From the NCBI GenBank assembly GCA_002269645.1, contig NIVC01001795.1, forward strand, positions 104,559 to 168,558: a stretch of 64,000 nt of DNA, read 5' to 3'. The translations under genes and the position numbers were made by a program. This DNA is from Macrostomum lignano (lineage: Eukaryota). The first letter of the stretch is position 1. Every line of letters begins with the position of its first letter. The notes under the pieces were generated by a model. That model had not been told where the DNA came from. It did not search any database and was given only the letters and a program-made list of their open reading frames with translations. Shown here piece by piece: positions 19,691 through 62,250 of the stretch.

Positions 19691-20269
19691 GTTTGTTTAT
19701 ATGGTCATGCTGGTCATGATCATCTTGTTCATAGGGTCATCATAGTCATATAATAATATTGGTTAAATAATCGGCTTAGTCATAGGGTCATAGAGGCCAC
19801 AGGTCTCCAACCTACTGAAGAAGTGAGTTCAGCTATTCAGTACGCAACCCATAGCGAGTGCTGACAATCAGAGCATGAGCTGCTACTCAGCAGCCAGCAT
19901 TAACAAACAAAAGCCATGCCAGAGGGGTTTCTGAACTCGCTAATGGGCCGAAATCCGACGCCAAACTCGGCCGGGATTTTATTGAAAGGTTTCGTTTGAA
20001 GGCCACCCGCCACCTGAAACCTTAAGAGAGAGCACCAGCTGCTGCAGCCTGGCACAGAGAATCTCAACTGAAAGGTTAGTCAATTGACAGCTGAGATGTC
20101 GAAAGTTCGGACGTAAAATTGGATGACAGAAAATTAGAAAGTTCGAGGTAGATACAGAATTAATTAGATAAGAATACAAAAGTAGACAAAATGGTAGACA
20201 CGTGTAGATAAATTGTAGGCATAAAGGTAGATGCATAGGTAGATATTGGTAAATTGTAGATGTAAATAC

Positions 20270-45060: not shown

Positions 45061-47982
45061 ATGCCAATGGCTAAAAGGAGAAAGAAACAACATGAAGAGG
45101 ATATGAAACAGGCAGCCAAAAAGTCAAGGAAAATGACTAACTGGTAAATACATAATCTAAATGTAGGCTATGAAGATATGATACTGTGTTGATATTAAGC
45201 TATATGCTGCTTGTTAATTGCTGTTTTTTAGGCTTGTTTCTCCCATTGAAGCTAACTCGAATGCTCCATCTGGCATAGCTGCTGCTAACTAAAGCTGACT
45301 TGAGAGAGCTTACTGCCCCTGCCGCTGCTGCCAATGCTGACTATTGCCCCTGCCGCTGCCAATGCTGACTCTACTGCCTTTGCCTTTGCCAATGCTGACT
45401 CTACTGCCCTTGCCACTGCCAATGCTGACTCTACTGCCCCTGCTGCTGCCAATGCTGACTCTACTGCCCCTGCCTTTGCCAATACTGACTTTACTGCCCC
45501 TGCCGCTGCTGCCAATGCTGACTCTACTGCCCCTGCCACTGCCAATGCTAACTCTACTGTCCCTGCCGCTGCCAATGCTGACTCTACTGCCCCTGCCACT
45601 GCCAATGCTAACTCTATTGTCCCTGCCGCTGCCAATGCTGACTCTACTGCCCCTGCTGCTGCCAATGCTGACTCTACTGCCCCTGCCGCTGCCAATGCTG
45701 ACTCTACTGCCCCTGCCGCTGCTGCCAATGCTGACTCTAGAGAGCCTACTGTCCCTGCCACTGTTGCCAATGCCAATGTTGGTGAGACTGCTGTATCTGT
45801 AGCAAAAAATACCATTCTTAGCACTAGCACATCTAATCCATGCGAAATGTAAGATTGCGGATACTGCCAGATTACAATGCAAAATCGGCCTGATTCCATA
45901 TCTGGTTTCAAGCAAGGAGGGAGTGGGAGCAGCAATGCAGGTCGATCATGCCAACTACAATAGTTTGTGCAGTTTGACTGGCTTACATACTGCTCATCTC
46001 AAGGCACTCTTTTTTGTTTTTATTGTCGCTTTGTGGTAAACTCAGATTTGAAGCTATCAAGAAGTTGTGGAGAGAGTACATTCACCTTTTGCAGCTTTTG
46101 TGACTGGAAAAAAGCAATTGAAAAGCTAAAGAAACGTAATAACAGTCATTTTCACTAAGAAGCCTACGAGAAGGTGTACACTCGACTGAAATTACAATCT
46201 ACAATAGGAGCATAATTAGATGCTATTCATTCTCAATAGCTATTACAAAATCGGGAAAATCTGCAATGGGTTTTTAGCTCATTGCGATATCTTATGCGTC
46301 AAGGAATGGCAATAAGAAATAGTAAGGAGATTGAAGGCAATCTTAGACAGCTGTTTATTTTAAGGTCTGAAGCTGAAGATGTGCCTGAACTGCAATCTTG
46401 GCTAAAGGATTCCAAGTACTTAAGTGTTGACATGATTAGAGAGATAATGGAAATCATGGCATATCAGGTTCTCCAAAGTTTGTTACTTGACATTAGCGAG
46501 AAGTCAACAATATTCACATTGATTGCTAATGAATCACGTGACATAAGCTGCAAGGAACAAATGTCAGTGTGCATTTGGTAGGTTTCAAAGCCAGATTTAC
46601 AAGTGCACGAAGACTTCATTGGCATGCATGAACTATGCGGAACTGGAGCTGAAATTATTACTTCAACCTTAAAAGACATTCTAACATGTTGTAACTTGAA
46701 GCTTAGCAACCTAAGAGGTCAAGCATATGATGGTGCTGCAAGTATGAGTGGTAGACTGACAGGCACGGCAACATGCATTAAAGAAGAACAACCACTAGCA
46801 TTGAGTGTTCATTGTGCTAACCACTGTCTGCAGCTGACCCTTCAAAGGTGCACTCGAGAATCAAATGTCATCAGTACCGCGTTAAGTACTGTACAAGAGA
46901 CTGTTGTCTTCATCAAAGCCTCTCCAAAGCGCTTTGACCTATTTCATACCTTGAATGAGTCATTTTCTATTGAGGAAGAGCAGGGCTACAATATTCACAT
47001 GCTCTGCCCAATGCGATGGAATGTTTGTTGTAAGGCAATTTTGTCTGTATTGCACAGCTACAAGTACTTGCTTAACTGCTTGGCCAAAATTGCTAGTGAG
47101 TCATCTGGAGAGAATCAATCAAAGGCAGAAAATCTACAAAAATCCCTTATGAAGTTCTCTGTTTATTTTGGAATTTGCGTAGCGCGAGTGATTTTTACAT
47201 TATCAGAGCAGCTGGCTATTACCAGAGTAAACTGCCTCAAAGACACACTTTTGCGTGAGCGAAGCATGTTTTCAGAGTGGTTTCAGGAAGTAGTCGAGGG
47301 TGCAGAGGCAGTTGGCATTGAACAAAAGCTACTAAGAGAACGAAGGACTCCAATAGGACTCAAACATAAAGGCAATAAAATGCATCCGGTTCAGCATCAA
47401 TCTAACTCTGTAAAAGAATACTATAGGTAGCATTATTATACCACTATTGATGCTTTAGTTTGCGAACTAGACAGTAGATTTGACTAGGAAGCATATAATG
47501 TGCTTAAAGACATAGAGAAGCTTCTTATTCATGTGGCCAATGGAGCAGCACTAATTCTATTCCAGCATCACTGATGGCGTACCATCCTATGGATTGGGAT
47601 GCTGGCAATCTTCAAGCACAGCTATGCTTGCTGCATGGATTTGTGAAGCATTGTTCACCTAAAGTAAAGCTCATTCCAAGGTTGACAACTCTGCATGACA
47701 TATTTACAAAAGAACAGATTCACCAGCCACTTTCAAGATGTATTTGCAATGCTGCATATCTACTTGGTAGTGCCAATGATATATGTCACTGCAAAAAGGT
47801 CATTTTCAGCCCAAAAACAGATCAAGAATTACTTGCGAAGTTCTATGACTGCCAAAACATACAACAGCTTCATGTTACTTAATGTGCATAAGAATCGTAC
47901 TGACAATCTGAACCTCGCACAAGCTGTTTACAAGTTTGTAAGTCGCAACAGCTGTCGGCAAACTTTCTTTGGCAGAGTATGA
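45061..47982 (+). pseudogene. hAT transposase pseudogene (ZMYM1-like/DUF4371 plus hATC dimerisation domain)
   Basis: FDWLTY..LFCFYC, ANESRD (first catalytic Asp is Asn), RGQAYDGAASMSG, VHCANHCLQL, CPMRW, TAKRSFS; several in-frame stops and frameshifts. Confidence 0.9.
45310..45740. repeat. 30-bp minisatellite inside the hAT element (GCTGCCAATGCTGACTCTACTGCCCCTGCC)
   Basis: Reads TAPAAANADS repeats on the transposase strand. Confidence 0.93.
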
Positions 47983-55963: not shown

Positions 55964-56781
<818 letters not shown>

Positions 56782-56812
56782 TGATTGATACCAATCCTAC
56801 TCCCAACGACAG

Positions 56813-57683: not shown

Positions 57684-57900
57684 ATGCTGATCCTTCAGCT
57701 GCTGCTGGCCACGCTGCCGGCCGTTGCCCAATGCTTCGACCAGTACCCGAAGCGACTGGCCTTCGAGCTGCCAGACAATGAGGAGTTCTGCTTTTATCAG
57801 GCGTTCGATAAATCAGAGTCGCGCGACTCGTTTCTGCTGCGATTCCGCGTCGTACGCGGCGGCAACAACGATGTGGACTTTCTAGTCCGCTCGCCAACAG
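57684..57900 (+). CDS. p24/TMED family GOLD-domain protein (p24gamma, TMED3/7-like), exon 1
   Basis: Signal peptide MLILQLLLATLPAVA; FELPDNEEFCFYQ and FRVVRGGNNDVDF GOLD motifs; donor G|GTGAGA, phase 1. Confidence 0.93.
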
Positions 57901-58229: not shown

Positions 58230-58669
58230 TGTTTATTGTCTGACAACGAAAGCGAACAACCGACGATGACTTTACGTTATTAACTGGATATACTTGAAGC
58301 ATCAAACACTCGCATTTGAAGCTGAAAATTCTAGTCTACCTGTACTAACTTTCTGGGGACAGGATAGCTCAACGAATGACGGCAGCAGCTCAGAAGACGA
58401 CTCTCGAGTCACAGACCACGGCTTTCGACTCCGCGATATTTATTTGGGGCCTCTTCACGAAAATTGGCTAAAGTGCGATTCATGCATCAACGAGGGCCAA
58501 CCCCAAGGCACAGAGGGTGTACACGTGTGAGCGTGTGTGCGAGTGCGTGTCGAGTACAGTATCTGCCCGATTGCATGTACTCAAGAGTCTGCGGAATGGG
58601 CGGAGTTGCCTTTCCGATGGCTGTAGGACGATGTAGGACCGAGTCCAGGGTGTCCACAACTTTCCTGTC

Positions 58670-59318
58670 TTTGACTTACTTGACTTAGCTGCAGGGCTGT
58701 CCCGGAGGGGACACAGCGGGAAGGCGCGGGCGCCCATTCCGCTAATCCCTGAACGGCCGACGCGTCGCTATGGACGGTGGTTATCCATAGTCGGCTCGAA
58801 GGCCATGATAAAAGGTTGGTGGGCTACCCTCAAAGGGCGCGGTACCCACCCGGCCGCTCCACCTGACCGGGCAGTAGGCCAATAGAACCCTCAAGGCTGG
58901 CCCGACACCAGGAGGGGGACCGCTTGCTACCGGACTACTCCCCGGCCTTCCAGCCCATCGGCACGGTCAACACCTTAGGCATTAGAGAGTACGTTGGGCA
59001 GTACCACGGCCTGCAGGTTGGCGAGCCAGACCCGCATACCCAAATTCGGCCGAAGCCACTGGATAGGGTCGCCAGCGCCGGAGCCCAGTCTGTCCAGCAG
59101 CCCTAGGGTCTGCCTTGAACACACGCGGGGACGAGTACCCTGGGTCGACTTGCGAGACAGCGTGGGGTCTGCGGCTGCCAGCGGCAAATAGAGGGTGCAG
59201 ACCTCCCACCAGCCTTGACCTGCCAAAGATAGGGGCAGGCGTGAAGCATCGCAGACCGTAGCCCATAGGCCCAGTCTGTCTCATACTTCACTGGCGTGCT
59301 GAATACACCTTCGCGTGC
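58670..59318 (-). mobile_element. Non-autonomous non-LTR retroposon (SINE/SIDE-like) with RTE-type tail and 5' HDV-like ribozyme
   Basis: 13-bp TSD CAACTTTCCTGTC at 58657-58669 and 59319-59331; minus-strand 3' tail TAAGTCAAGTAAGTCAAA; no RT ORF; dense hairpins. Confidence 0.85.
59038..59318 (-). ncRNA. HDV-like self-cleaving ribozyme (predicted)
   Basis: P1 GCACGCG (59318-12) / CGCGUGU (59127-21) with G1.U wobble; P3 GGG/CCC; L3 UACUCGU; P1.1 AC/GU; P2 5' strand ACCCA; J4/2 either CAGAC (C59092) or CGAA (C59048). Confidence 0.75.
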
Positions 59319-59385
59319 CAACTTTCCTGTCAATATTAATTGCATATTTCTACAATCAATAACGTTTGGCATTCGTAACTGACAG

Positions 59386-59825
59386 GCGAGAAGATCTACT
59401 CCAAGCTAAGGGCGCGCTCAGACGAACGGGCGTTCAAATTTATGGGCGGCGGCGCGTACGCCTTCTGCTTCGGCAACGAGTTCTCAACAGTGACACACAA
59501 GGTGGTGCAGTTCGCTCTGGACAGGAGCCGGGCGCCCTCCCTGGCCGAGGAGGCCGGGGTCACCCCGCCCACCGCGCTGACGCTGCTGCAATCGGAGCTG
59601 GAGGCCGTCCACCAGCAGCTCGTGCGGGCGGAGGCGGCCCAGACGATGCACCGGGCCCGGGAAGTCGAAGGCCGAGCATTGAGCGACGACCTCAACAGGC
59701 GGGTTGCGACATTCAGCGGCATCCTGGCGGTTGCTGTGCTGGCCTGCGGACTCGGCCAGGTGGCCGCGCTGAAGGCTCTGTTTGGGGGCGCGGTCCGACA
59801 AGCAAAAATCAGCCAGGTGGCTTAG
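59386..59825 (+). CDS. p24/TMED protein, exon 2
   Basis: TAACTGACAG| acceptor; GEKIY...YAFCFGNEFSTVTHKVVQF, coiled coil, TM segment and tail ending ISQVA-TAG; total 218 aa. Confidence 0.93.
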
Positions 59826-60037
59826 CTTCAATTGGAGTTTATTACACAAAGACTCAACACCTGTTTGCACTCGTGTTTTGGTGTCCTGATTATATTAGAC
59901 ATTACATTTTAGAATTTTGTTTGAATACTATGGTAATGTTATTGTGAATTTAAAGTAAATACTCAACACTGACCATATTCAGTATCATGTTTTGTGATAA
60001 AGAAAAATTTTCTTGTCTATCTTGCCGGAGTTCTAAA

Positions 60038-60220
60038 GGAAGGAAGGAAGGAAGGAAGGAAGGAAGGAAGGAAGGAAGGAAGGAAGGAAGGAAGGAAGGA
60101 AGGAAGGAAGGAAGGAAGGAAGGAAGGAAGGAAGGAAGGAAGGAAGGAAGGAAGGAAGGGGGAAGGAAGAAAGGAAGGAAGGAAGGAAGGAAGGAAGGGG
60201 GAAGGAAGGAAGGGGAAAGG
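60038..60220. repeat. (GGAA)n microsatellite
   Basis: Direct inspection. Confidence 0.97.
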
Positions 60221-62250
60221 ATCTCTCTGTTCCATCCGGTCATTCTCTAAGATTGAATAAGTTCAGGTTAAAAGTTTCAAAACAGAAATGTAACAATATT
60301 TTGTTCAGCTACAGCATGTCCATATTTGTACTTAAAGTAGCATATTAAGCCAGTGGGTTTTTATCACAGTAAATAAAAATAATCGATGGTTTTTTCGACG
60401 TGGATAAAAAAGCGAACCGACAGAATTTGAATAAAAATTTTAGTCGGATAAAAGAGTCAAAGTCTGCACAATTTCCCCATATTTCCCCATACTTCCCCAT
60501 ATTTTCCCATACTTCCCCATACTTACCCATATTTCCTCATATTTCCCCATAATTCCACATATTTTCCCATACTTCCCCATACTTACCCATATTTCCTCAT
60601 ATTTCCCCATATTTCCCCATACTTCCCCATACTTCCCCATATTTCCCCATACTTCCCCATACTTCCCCATACTTCCTCATATTTCCCCATATTTCCCCAT
60701 ACTTCCCCATATTTCCCCATACTTCCCCATCCTTCCCCATACTTCCTCATATTTCCCCATATTTCCCCATACTTCCCCATATTTTCCCATACTTCCCCAT
60801 ACTTACCCATATTTCCTCATATTTCCCCATAATTCCACATATTTTCCCATACTTCCCCATACTTACCCATATTTCCTCATATTTCCCCATATTTCCCATA
60901 TTTCCCCATACTTCCCCATATTTCCCCATACTTCCCCATACTTCCTCATATTTCCCCATATTTCCCATACTTCCCCATATTTTCCCATATCCCCCATCCT
61001 TCCCCATCCTTCCTCATATTTCCCCATATTTCCCCATACTTCCCCATATTTTCCCATACTTCCCCATACTTACCCATATTTCCTCATATTTCCCCATATT
61101 TCCCCATACTTCCCCATACTTCCCCATATTTCCCCATACTTCCCCATACTTCCCCATACTTCCCCATATTTTCCCATACTTCCCCATACTTCCCCATACT
61201 TCATCATATTTCCCCATATTTCCCCATACTTCCCCATACTTCCCCATACTTCCTCATATTTCCCCATACTTCCTCATATTTCCCCATATTTCCCCATACT
61301 TCCCCATATTTTCCCATACTTCCCCATACTTCATCATATTTCCCCATATTTCCCCATACTTCCCCATACTTCCCCATACTTCCCCATATTTCCCCATATT
61401 TCCCCATATTTCCCCGTACTTCCCCATACTTCCCCATACTTCATCATATTTCCCCATATTTCCCCATACTTCCCCATACTTCCCCATACTTCCTCATATT
61501 TCCCCATACTTCCCCATACTTCCCCATACTTCCTCATATTTCCCCATACTTCCCCATATTTCCCTATACTTCCCCATACTTCCCCATACTTCCTCATATT
61601 TTCCCATACTTCCCCATACTTACCCATATTTCCTCATATTTCCCCATAATTCCACATATTTTCCCATACTTCCCCATACTTCCCCATACTTCCCCATATT
61701 TCCCCATATTTCCCCATACTTCCCCATTTTTCTCCATATTTCCCCATATTTCCCCATATTTCTGCATATTTCCCCATATTTCTCCATATTTCCCCATATT
61801 TCTGCATATTTCCCCATATTTCCCCACATTTCCCCATATTTCTCAATATTTCCCCACATTTCCCCATATTTCTCCATATTTCCCCATATTTCTGCATATT
61901 TCCCCATATTTCCCCACATTTCCCCATATTTCTCAATATTTCCCCATATTTCCGCATATTTCTGCACATTTCTGCCTACTTTTCCATATTTCTCCATATC
62001 TCTCTGTTCCATCCGGTCATTCTCTAAGATTGAATAAGTTCAGGTTAAAAGTTTCAAAACAGAAATGTAACAATATTTTGTTCAGTACAGCATGTCCATA
62101 TTTGTACTTAAAGTAGCATATTAAGCCAGTGGGTTTTTTCACAGTAAATAAAAATAATCGATGGTTTTTTCGACGTGGATAAAAAGCGAACGACAGAATT
62201 TGGATAAATAAATTTTAGTCGGATAAAAGAGTCAAAGTCTGCAACAATTT
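60221..62250. repeat. Direct duplication of about 250 bp unique sequence (60221-60470 and 61998-62250), period 1777 bp
   Basis: ATCTCTCTGTTCCATCCGG...AAAGTCTGC present twice; the copies differ mainly by small indels. Confidence 0.95.
60470..61997. repeat. 10-bp satellite TTCCCCATA(C/T), clean register
   Basis: Direct inspection. Confidence 0.97.

What the first reader, a model, noticed from the sequence alone, without database searches (positions are those of the whole stretch)
58657..59331. 649-bp ORF-less retroposon with 13-bp TSD and RTE-like tail, a candidate ribozyme-headed SINE/SIDE family
Seen: perfect TSD CAACTTTCCTGTC, tail (TAAGTCAAG)2, no RT fragment, and no Pol III A/B boxes that I could recognise. 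The 3' end reads ...PLCPLRD, loosely like the ALCP-type ends I recall for RTE ORFs. Inference: an internally deleted or chimeric element keeping only the 5' ribozyme and the 3' RT-recognition end, analogous to R2 SIDEs but mobilised by an RTE-clade partner. It lies antisense in the TMED intron about 55 nt from the acceptor. In that orientation the host pre-mRNA would not self-cleave.
Basis: partly seen in the sequence, partly recalled or inferred. Interest (0 to 1): 0.75.

Follow-up and report, generated by a model that had tools for sequence, protein, structure and literature searches.

The report
Internally deleted flatworm LINE copy
A 649-bp insertion in an intron of a Macrostomum (flatworm) p24/TMED gene is a gutted copy of a jumping gene that kept only its head, which may fold into a self-cutting RNA, and its tail; this is a known kind of parasite-of-a-parasite, not a new one.

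Summary
A 649-bp, ORF-less, GC-rich element (window 58670-59318, sense on the minus strand) is flanked by a perfect 13-bp target-site duplication. It ends in a short tandem tail and lies antisense in a p24/TMED intron, 54 nt from the acceptor.

It is not a truncated 3' UTR and not RTE-related. Nt 96-326 recur at 94-97% identity in Macrostomum lignano gene models, where they continue into ORF1, endonuclease, reverse transcriptase and RNase H of a multi-copy LINE. The last ~80 nt, tail included, match the 3' UTR directly after the ORF2 stop of a related RNase H-bearing LINE (metagenome contig L001), with a shared fold. So it is an internally deleted LINE derivative with SIDE/RIME/NARTc-like architecture.

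An HDV-like double-pseudoknot fold can be drawn whose P1 starts exactly at element nt 1. It has a canonical P3/L3/P1.1 core and a 167-nt J1/2 insert. Chance rate is about 2.5e-4 per start position, but P2 is weak, the descriptor was tightened post hoc, and there is no Rfam hit, covariation or assay.

Only one insertion event is documented, so "family" is untested. Nt 327-567 remain unexplained. Verdict: new member of a known kind, of modest interest.

The parts
58657..58669 (.). Target-site duplication, copy next to the element's 3' end
   Evidence: Perfect 13-mer CAACTTTCCTGTC; only two copies in the window, 0.06 expected
59319..59331 (.). Target-site duplication, copy next to the element's 5' end; ends 54 nt before the TMED exon-2 acceptor
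58670..59318 (-). The whole 649-bp element (element nt 1 = window 59318). ORF-less, 62.6% GC
58993..59318 (-). Element nt 1-326: the 5' end of the parent LINE (5' UTR plus the first ~15 codons of ORF1). Nt 96-326 are directly matched; nt 1-95 are assigned only by contiguity
   Evidence: tblastn of M. lignano gene models P0002/3/4 at 94-97% identity. In those models the same frame continues into ORF1-APE-RT-RNase H. All matches end at window 58993
59084..59318 (-). Candidate HDV-like self-cleaving ribozyme, element nt 1-235. An alternative 3' boundary is nt 281 (window 59038), using C271 GAA and a 5-bp P2 (ACCCA/UGGGU)
   Evidence: Own descriptor search. This is the only hit among 549 start positions in the element. 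Background is 1.4e-4 per start in the window and 2.5e-4 in dinucleotide shuffles. The fold costs only 3.3 kcal/mol over the MFE before counting P2 and P1.1
59312..59318 (-). P1 5' strand GCACGCG (nt 1-7). The predicted cleavage site lies immediately 5' of nt 1, which is the TSD/element junction
59145..59311 (-). J1/2 insertion, nt 8-174 (167 nt). Folds on its own into four hairpins
   Evidence: P1-P1' separations of 23 to >700 nt are reported for R2 ribozymes (PMC3774820)
59119..59144 (-). Ribozyme core: P2 5' strand CCCA (nt 175-178), P3 GGG/CCC (179-181/189-191), L3 UACUCGU (182-188), P1 3' strand CGCGUGU (192-198, G1-U198 wobble), P1.1 GU (199-200) pairing with A183-C184
   Evidence: L3 has the first-position U and penultimate G described as conserved (PMC3774820). 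With that rule the chance rate is 4.3e-4 per start
59084..59113 (-). P4 hairpin (nt 206-222, bulged A210, loop CUAG), J4/2 with candidate catalytic C227 (C-A-G-A), and P2 3' strand UGGG (232-235)
   Evidence: This is the weakest part: P2 is only 4 bp, and there are 4 nt between P4 and C227
58975..59037 (-). Remnant ORF1 start: ATG at nt 282, reading MRVWLANLQAVVLPNVLSNA*. It follows the parent LINE for the first 15 codons (one L-to-P difference at codon 14) and departs from it after nt 326
   Evidence: Parent copies read ...MRVWLANLQAVVLLNSEGPAG...
58752..58992 (-). Element nt 327-567: segment of unresolved origin. It is either the parent LINE's own long 3' region or captured sequence
   Evidence: No protein hit in any frame. 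No similarity to the ORF2 C-terminus of the relative P0005 or to any retrieved LINE fragment. No Rfam hit
58670..58751 (-). Element nt 568-649: LINE 3' UTR module. An outer stem CAGGG/CCCUG (nt 568-572/623-627) encloses two hairpins and is followed by the tail
   Evidence: 78% identity over 81 nt (E 3e-12) to L001 2431-2509, which starts 14 nt after the ORF2 stop of an RNase H-bearing LINE. Shared fold: 22 pairs, stems kept while loops differ, 2 pairs changed on both sides
58670..58687 (-). 3' tandem tail TAAGTCAAG-TAAGTCAAA
   Evidence: The relative L001 ends TAAGTCAAAG-TAAGTCAG-TAAGTCAA, three units
57684..57900 (+). Host p24/TMED exon 1 (ATG to donor G|GTGAG)
59386..59825 (+). Host p24/TMED exon 2 (acceptor ACAG| to stop)

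Best explanation
The element is an internally deleted derivative of a multi-copy non-LTR retrotransposon (LINE) of Macrostomum lignano or a very close relative. The parent encodes an ORF1-like protein, an AP endonuclease, a reverse transcriptase and an RNase H.

Shown: the first 326 nt are the parent's 5' UTR plus the first ~15 codons of ORF1. The last ~80 nt are the family's structured 3' UTR with its TAAGTCA(A)G-type tandem tail. Everything coding in between is gone. The exact 13-bp duplication shows it entered the TMED intron by target-primed reverse transcription.

Inferred, about 55-60%: the 5' 235-281 nt fold into an HDV-like self-cleaving ribozyme with a large J1/2 insert. This would cut a read-through transcript exactly at element nt 1, which would explain why the insertion starts there. 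The 3' UTR stem-loops plus tail are what the parent's RT recognises ('stringent' LINE behaviour).

Inferred, about 50%: the short RNA itself was copied in trans by the parent's proteins, as for R2 SIDEs, ingi/RIME and L1Tc/NARTc. The alternative is a full-length insertion deleted later in place.

Because the element is antisense to TMED, the host pre-mRNA carries only the complement of the ribozyme.
For: TSD and exact boundaries.

5' part equals the LINE 5' end: a six-frame query hit four M. lignano gene models at 94-97%. In three of them the matched frame runs on into ORF1, LILIQEPW (APE), YADD (RT), CYTDGS (RNase H) and a Cys/His tail. All matches stop at window 58993. Further fragments of the same LINE occur in at least seven other M. 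lignano gene models (P0006-P0013, identity to the query fragments 43-100%), so the LINE is multi-copy.

3' part equals a LINE 3' UTR: L001 carries an intact ORF2 (open RT frame, Pfam RNase_H 5.6e-16), then its stop, then a ~100-nt UTR. That UTR aligns to element nt 568-647 at 78% and ends in the same tail. The fold is shared.

Ribozyme: P1 (7 bp, G-U at the cleavage site) starts at nt 1. P3, a 7-nt L3 with conserved U and G, P1', P1.1, P4, C-N-R-A and P2 are all in canonical order. Chance rates per start position are 1.4e-4 (window), 2.5e-4 (shuffles) and 4.3e-4 for the 5' half alone with the L3 rule. The energy is competitive with the MFE. Large J1/2 inserts and 5'-terminal HDV-like ribozymes are documented in R2, R4, Dong, Baggins and L1Tc (PMC3774820; PMC3383444).
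Against: No full-length DNA copy of the parent could be retrieved, so three points are not directly shown. Element nt 1-95 are not shown to be LINE. Nt 327-567 are not shown to be LINE. The element's 3' UTR is not shown to belong to the same LINE as its 5' end.

Only one insertion event is documented. P0001 is the same locus in a homeolog or another assembly.

Ribozyme weaknesses: no Rfam HDV-type hit even at E<=10; P2 is 4 bp (5 bp in the alternative); the 3' half has two competing solutions; the strict descriptor was fixed after seeing the candidate; there is no covariation. A second P3/L3/P1'-like motif at nt 409-430 shows that such half-motifs do arise in this GC-rich sequence.
Confidence: 0.65

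Rival explanations
1. A dead full-length LINE insertion that lost its interior by an ordinary genomic deletion after it inserted. On this reading the short form was never an RNA and never moved, so there is no non-autonomous family.
For: Only one insertion event is seen (window plus P0001). The junction peptide LQAVVLPN was found in no other gene model, whereas three models carry the undeleted 5' UTR-ORF1 continuation. A TSD is equally expected in this case.
Against: If a single deletion occurred, nt 327-649 should be the parent's last 323 nt. In the relative L001 those would include ~70 ORF2 codons, yet nt 327-567 show no coding similarity. This is weak, because UTR lengths differ between relatives. 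The retained parts are precisely the two modules needed for mobilisation.
Confidence: 0.35
2. The 5' region is only a structured LINE 5' UTR or internal promoter. The HDV-like drawing is a coincidence in a GC-rich sequence, and the element starts at nt 1 because that is the transcription start.
For: No Rfam hit. P2 is weak and J4/2 ambiguous. The first loose descriptor hit ~12% of start positions. A second half-motif lies elsewhere in the element. The descriptor was tightened post hoc.
Against: With canonical constraints, only nt 1 of 549 starts passes. The chance rate is 1.4-2.5e-4 per start, and the start position was fixed independently by the TSD. L3 carries the conserved U and G.
Confidence: 0.4
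3. A chimeric element. The LINE 5' end and 3' UTR are joined through a foreign 240-nt segment (nt 327-567) picked up by RT template switching or recombination, comparable to R2/R1 hybrid SIDEs.
For: Nt 327-567 match nothing retrieved: no LINE protein fragment, no ORF2 C-terminus, no Rfam family. Template jumps and hybrid SIDEs are documented for R2 (PMC3414825).
Against: The parent's own 3' region was never seen, so a long native 3' UTR explains the data just as well. GC content is uniform across the element.
Confidence: 0.2
4. One reading: a SINE/SIDE mobilised by an RTE-clade LINE.
For: A short tandem-repeat tail without poly(A) is also typical of RTE elements (general knowledge).
Against: The only LINEs sharing its 5' end and its 3' UTR and tail have an ORF1-like region plus APE-RT-RNase H and a C-terminal Cys/His motif. 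The 'RTE-like ORF end' lies in UTR.
Confidence: 0.03
5. Simply a 5'-truncated LINE 3' end, or a Pol III (tRNA/7SL/5S-headed) SINE.
For: 5'-truncated copies are the commonest LINE insertions (general knowledge).
Against: The 5' half is the LINE's 5' UTR and ORF1 start. There is no tRNA, 7SL or 5S hit and there are no A/B boxes.
Confidence: 0.02

Closest known systems
R2 SIDEs (Short Internally Deleted Elements) of Drosophila (Eickbush & Eickbush 2012, PMC3414825)
   Same: A 5' end of the autonomous LINE with a (candidate) HDV-like ribozyme is joined to the LINE 3' UTR needed for TPRT. No ORF, a few hundred bp long, dependent on the parent's proteins.
   Different: The parent here is not R2. It has APE rather than a restriction-like endonuclease, plus ORF1 and RNase H. 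Insertion is in a gene intron with a 13-bp TSD, not in the 28S site. There is an unexplained 240-nt middle segment. Multiple independent copies are not shown.
ingi/RIME and L1Tc/NARTc of trypanosomatids (PMC3383444, PMC4035085)
   Same: RNase H-bearing LINEs whose short non-autonomous partners are internal-deletion derivatives sharing both ends. L1Tc and NARTc carry an HDV-like ribozyme at the very 5' end.
   Different: The trypanosomatid ribozyme is compact (first 77 nt) and doubles as the Pr77 promoter. Here the fold spans ~235 nt with a 167-nt J1/2 insert. The tails differ (poly(A) there, a 9-mer repeat here). No sequence similarity was tested. Clade membership of the flatworm LINE is undetermined.
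HDV-like ribozymes with large J1/2 domains: R2 of silkmoths and honeybee, drz-Agam-2-1 (PMC3774820, PMC4908430)
   Same: A 7-bp P1 is separated from P1' by hundreds of nt. The P3/L3/P1.1 core is conserved. Cleavage defines the element's 5' end.
   Different: Those are experimentally active and supported by covariation. This one is a single-sequence prediction with a 4-5 bp P2.
Perere-3 with twister-variant ribozymes in Schistosoma mansoni (PMC8501958)
   Same: A flatworm LINE with a 5'-terminal self-cleaving ribozyme next to non-site-specific TSDs.
   Different: A different ribozyme class (twister against HDV-like) and a different LINE family. No twister hit here.

Membership tests
SIDE-type non-autonomous LINE derivative | The 5' end is identical to the 5' end of an autonomous LINE | tested here: met
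   Nt 96-326 are 94-97% identical (translated) to the segment preceding ORF1 in P0002/3/4. Nt 1-95 are not covered by any retrieved sequence.
SIDE-type non-autonomous LINE derivative | The 3' end is the LINE 3' UTR used for TPRT | tested here: met
   Nt 568-647 are 78% identical to the UTR after the ORF2 stop in L001, with the same tail and the same fold. The match is to a relative, not to the M. lignano parent itself.
SIDE-type non-autonomous LINE derivative | No functional ORF; coding interior deleted | tested here: met
   Only a 20-codon ORF1 remnant is left.
SIDE-type non-autonomous LINE derivative | Propagated as the short form: several independent insertions share the internal junction | not testable with these tools
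   No eukaryotic genome search is available. The metagenome, viral and prokaryote scans were empty. The gene-model sample shows the junction only at this locus.
HDV-like self-cleaving ribozyme | Nested double pseudoknot P1-P2-P3-P1.1-P4, with P1' directly 3' of P3 | tested here: met
   All helices are present in order. P2 is only 4 bp (5 bp in the alternative).
HDV-like self-cleaving ribozyme | Conserved L3 nucleotides (U and G forming the reverse wobble) and a C at the start of J4/2 | tested here: inconclusive
   L3 is UACUCGU, with U182 and G187. There are two candidate catalytic Cs (C227, C271), and neither lies directly after a clean P4.
HDV-like self-cleaving ribozyme | Match to curated covariance models | tested here: not met
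   No Rfam hit at E<=10. These models do not encode the pseudoknots or a 167-nt insert, so this is weak negative evidence.
HDV-like self-cleaving ribozyme | Self-cleavage activity; covariation among copies | not testable with these tools
   Only one DNA copy of the 5' end is available. Amino-acid-level variants in four copies fall outside the core helices, but there are too few to be informative.
RTE-clade LINE as partner | Single ORF with APE+RT only, no RNase H, no substantial ORF1 | tested here: not met
   The parent and its relative have an ORF1-like region and RNase H (Pfam PF00075, 5.6e-16).
Pol III SINE | tRNA-, 7SL- or 5S-derived head with A/B boxes | tested here: not met

The most novel reading that the evidence does not exclude
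A currently mobile, ribozyme-headed non-autonomous retroposon family in Macrostomum, driven by an RNase H-bearing LINE (I/Ingi/LOA-type supergroup). Its HDV-like ribozyme has an unusually large J1/2 domain and sits immediately upstream of the ORF1 start. That would extend the SIDE principle beyond rDNA-specific R2/R1 and trypanosomatid ingi elements to a dispersed LINE of a regenerating, transgenesis-capable model flatworm.
Probability: 0.3. Interest if true: 0.45.

Novelty: new member of a known kind. Interest (0 to 1): 0.3.

Why it matters
If the fold is active and the short form is mobile, this gives a compact, testable example in a transgenesis-capable flatworm of the minimal RNA needed for LINE mobilisation: a ribozyme head plus a 3' UTR recognition module. 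It would also be another independent case of HDV-like ribozymes defining LINE 5' ends outside R2.

Practically, the element and its parent LINE are being read as exons in M. lignano gene models (P0001-P0004, P0006-P0013). That is an annotation problem worth flagging. Otherwise it is an ordinary intronic transposon remnant with no evident effect on the TMED gene.

Tried and rejected
- **Rfam.** The region at E<=10 and the whole window at gathering gave nothing relevant.
- **ARAGORN and A/B-box scans.** No Pol III head.
- **Other copies in the window.** None by blastn at word size 7 or by tblastn with LINE proteins.
- **Contigs for M. lignano gene models.** P0001-P0004 are not on record, so no DNA of the parent LINE or of the homeologous locus could be read.
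- **Spliced TMED protein look-up.** Tried in order to find an empty-site paralogue. The tool turned it away, and I did not try it another way.
- **Collection scans.** The metagenome scan with the conserved 3' motif gave 0 hits and did not even recover L001. Metagenome, viral and prokaryote-genome scans with the ORF2 alignment gave no confirmed relatives.
- **ORF1 query for relatives with 5' ends.** Only M. lignano gene models came back, without contigs.
- **ORF2 C-terminus of P0005 against element nt 327-567.** No similarity. A weak P0002 hit (E 0.008 against a 649-nt target) was judged to be chance.
- **First loose HDV descriptor.** Uninformative: about 12% of start positions hit.
- **Other strict-descriptor hits in the window.** For example minus 19920 and plus 35773, the latter inside a tandem repeat. 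They look like chance.
- **Published RNABob/RNArobo descriptor text.** Not obtainable: it is in figures only, and two key papers are not held.
- **LINE clade assignment** (I, Ingi/Vingi, LOA, R1 ...). Not possible without a named reference set.
Full report
**Observation.** The 13-mer CAACTTTCCTGTC occurs exactly twice in the window, at 58657-58669 and 59319-59331 (0.06 expected even allowing one mismatch). The bases outside the two copies differ, so the insert is exactly 58670-59318, 649 bp. It is 62.6% GC in a 47% GC window, and there is no second copy in the 64 kb. Read on the minus strand it ends ...CCCTGCAGC-TAAGTCAAG-TAAGTCAAA with no poly(A). All six frames are interrupted. ARAGORN finds no tRNA. 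Rfam finds nothing relevant at E<=10 in the region and nothing at gathering score in the window. Pol III A/B-box scans are at chance level. The only quibble is that the second tail unit ends in A rather than G.

**Host context.** Splicing 57684-57900 to 59386-59825 gives a 218-aa protein that matches emp24/GOLD end to end (PF01105, positions 2-181 of 182, E 2.6e-31). The insert lies antisense in the 1485-nt intron, 54 nt upstream of the acceptor. The branch-point and polypyrimidine region next to the acceptor is untouched.

**Organism and parent element.** I sent a six-frame translation of the element to the 5.8-billion-protein search. It returned four long chimeric gene models at 94-97% identity, and nothing else. 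One is labelled Macrostomum lignano.

In P0002, P0003 and P0004 the matched frame continues without interruption. The frame reads ...GQGWWEVCTLYLPLAAADPTLSRKSTQGTRPRVCSRQTLGLLDRLGSGAGDPIQWLRPNLGMRVWLANLQAVVL... It runs on into a basic, ORF1-like region, then LILIQEPW (AP endonuclease), YADD (reverse transcriptase), CYTDGS (RNase H) and a Cys/His motif. All three matches stop at window 58993, which is element nt 326. The first ATG of that frame is at nt 282 (MRVWLANLQAVVL...). So nt 1-281 are 5' UTR, and the break lies about 15 codons into ORF1. What remains is a 20-codon stub, MRVWLANLQAVVLPNVLSNA*. At least seven further M. lignano gene models (P0006-P0013) carry fragments of the same LINE, at 43-100% identity to the query fragments, so the parent is multi-copy.

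P0001 is different. It is an antisense gene model of this same region, with exons matching window 59722 down to 24663 at 89-100% for most exons (69-77% for two short ones). It includes the element together with its deletion junction (LQAVVLPN). It therefore represents the same insertion in a homeolog, haplotype or other assembly, not an independent insertion.

**The 3' end.** An ORF2 C-terminal query found one protein with a contig on record, P0005, on JGI metagenome contig L001. L001 carries an open RT frame running off the contig, then RNase H (Pfam 5.6e-16) and the Cys/His motif, then a stop at 2414-2416. About 100 nt of GC-rich UTR follow, ending ...CCCTGCAGC-TAAGTCAAAG-TAAGTCAG-TAAGTCAA, and then AT-rich flank.

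Element nt 568-647 align to L001 2431-2509 at 78% (E 3e-12). The two sequences share a fold: an outer stem CAGGG/CCCUG encloses a two-tiered hairpin whose stems are identical while its loop differs (CCCG against GCAA), plus a second hairpin whose sequence has changed. This is what is expected of the RT-recognition module of a 'stringent' LINE.

A partner with ORF1 and RNase H is not RTE-like.

**What the element is.** It is neither a 5'-truncated LINE 3' UTR nor a Pol III SINE. It is an internal-deletion derivative: LINE head (nt 1-326) plus LINE 3' module (nt 568-649), bounded by a TPRT-type duplication. This is the architecture of R2 SIDEs (PMC3414825) and of ingi/RIME and L1Tc/NARTc (PMC3383444).

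Two things remain open.

- **Nt 327-567 match nothing.** There is no protein in any frame, no similarity to the ORF2 C-terminus of P0005 or to any LINE fragment retrieved, and no Rfam family. The segment may be the parent's own long 3' region or captured sequence.
- **Only one insertion event is documented.** Whether the short form ever moved as such, or a full-length insertion was deleted in place, cannot be decided here.

**The ribozyme question.** Rfam gives no HDV-type, twister or hammerhead hit. A loose descriptor of my own was uninformative, but it pointed to one arrangement that I then examined:

- P1: nt 1-7 GCACGCG pairs with nt 192-198 CGCGUGU, with a G-U wobble at the cleavage site.
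- P3 and L3: directly 5' of P1' sits P3 GGG/CCC, closing a 7-nt L3, UACUCGU.
- P1.1: the two bases after P1' (GU) pair with A183-C184 of L3.
- P4: a hairpin follows at nt 206-222.
- J4/2: C227-A-G-A.
- P2: UGGG (232-235) pairs with CCCA (175-178), directly 5' of P3.

An alternative 3' half uses C271-G-A-A and a 5-bp P2 (ACCCA/UGGGU at 277-281). J1/2 is 167 nt and folds by itself into four hairpins.

Forcing P1 and P3, and leaving the pseudoknot bases free, costs only 3.3 kcal/mol relative to the MFE of nt 1-240, before P2 and P1.1 are credited.

With canonical constraints, nt 1 is the only one of 549 start positions in the element that passes. The constraints were a 7-bp P1, a 3-bp P3, L3 of 6-8 nt, a 2-bp P1.1, P4 of at least 4 bp, C-N-R-A, and P2 of at least 4 bp. 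The hit rate is 18 of 127,340 starts over both strands of the window, and 41 of 164,700 in dinucleotide shuffles of the element. The 5' half alone passes at 0.68% of shuffled starts. With the published L3 rule (first U and penultimate G form a reverse wobble; PMC3774820) that falls to 0.043%.

The literature supports the unusual spacing. P1 and P1' are 23 to more than 700 nt apart in R2 ribozymes, and J1/2 loops are 216-498 nt in silkmoths. Structured J1/2 domains activate large HDV-like ribozymes (PMC4908430).

The start position was fixed independently by the TSD, and that is the main reason I take the fold seriously.

Against it:

- I set the strict descriptor after seeing the candidate.
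- P2 is short, and the 3' half is ambiguous.
- A second P3/L3/P1'-like half-motif exists at nt 409-430.
- No second DNA copy of the 5' end was available for covariation. The few amino-acid-level variants among four copies fall outside the core helices or in the P4 bulge codon, but they are too few to count.

I put the ribozyme at roughly 55-60%.

**Mechanism proposed.** The insertion by TPRT and the origin of both ends are shown. The rest is inferred. The parent LINE is co-transcribed from upstream sequence. The 5' ribozyme cuts at nt 1 and defines the RNA 5' end. The ORF1 start lies 46 nt (or 0 nt in the alternative) past the ribozyme. The parent's RT binds the 3' stem-loops and tail and primes on a nicked target. 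A deletion-bearing RNA that keeps both modules is copied in trans. In the TMED intron the element is antisense, so the pre-mRNA contains only the complement. No descriptor hit exists on the + strand inside the element.

**Comparison and novelty.** Each ingredient is known:

- HDV-like ribozymes at LINE 5' ends: R2, R4, Dong, Baggins, L1Tc.
- Ribozyme-headed deletion derivatives: SIDEs, NARTc.
- Ribozyme-headed LINEs in flatworms: the R2 of planaria, and Perere-3 with twister variants.

What would be new is the host (Macrostomum), the parent type (a dispersed, RNase H-bearing LINE that is neither R2 nor RTE), and the 5' UTR layout. I rate it a new member of a known kind, with interest 0.3. The RTE attribution should be dropped, and the word 'family' withheld until a genome-wide copy count is done.

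**Limits.** No eukaryotic genome or repeat library could be searched. Four gene-model look-ups were not on record. All collection scans were empty. The LINE clade could not be named. I did not seed any model with the viral ribozyme sequence; only a sequence-free descriptor and published retrotransposon data were used.

Noticed in passing
window 24663-59722, minus strand (gene model P0001): A 1593-aa public gene model strings together the antisense of TMED exon 2, 78 codons of the retroposon's 5' UTR, several other pieces and genuine casein-kinase-II-alpha-like exons (about 42871-35362). It is a chimeric annotation in which the transposon is read as an exon. P0002-P0004 and P0006-P0013 likewise fuse LINE pieces to GPCR, UBC9, RIO kinase, histone and other genes.
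   Followed up: partly
window 56000-56790; 60036-60213; 60471-61999: There are very long simple repeats close to the TMED gene: (TAGA)~197, (AAGG)~45, and a 10-mer satellite ATTTCCCCAT of about 153 copies.
   Followed up: no
window 58889-58910, minus strand (element nt 409-430): This is a second P3/L3/P1'/P1.1-like half-motif (UGG-UGUCGGG-CCA-GCCUUGA-GG). Its P1' is complementary to UCAAGGC, which occurs at element nt 101-107 and 201-207. It is probably chance, with about 0.17 expected per element.
   Followed up: partly
window 59269-59280 and 59083-59094: There is an exact 12-nt direct repeat, GACAGACTGGGC in element sense, at nt 39-50 (inside J1/2) and nt 225-236 (covering the candidate J4/2 and P2 3' strand). 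It could offer an alternative pairing or reflect an old duplication.
   Followed up: no
L001 (JGI metagenome 3300038379, contig Ga0394873_0189874), 1-2733: An environmental metagenome contig carries an apparently intact ORF2 of a LINE about 54-59% identical to the M. lignano one, with the same 3' UTR and tail. It is inserted in AT-rich DNA (39% GC flank). So a related animal, possibly another flatworm, is present in that sample.
   Followed up: partly
window 46603-47430, plus strand: This ORF has a weak DUF4371 match (E 1e-3, below Pfam's cutoff). It is possibly a remnant of a hAT/ZBED-type transposase.
   Followed up: no
window 19831-19920, minus strand: This is a compact (90-nt) hit of my strict HDV-like descriptor that lacks the conserved L3 letters. 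About 18 such hits occur in the window, which I take as the chance level, so it is most likely noise.
   Followed up: partly
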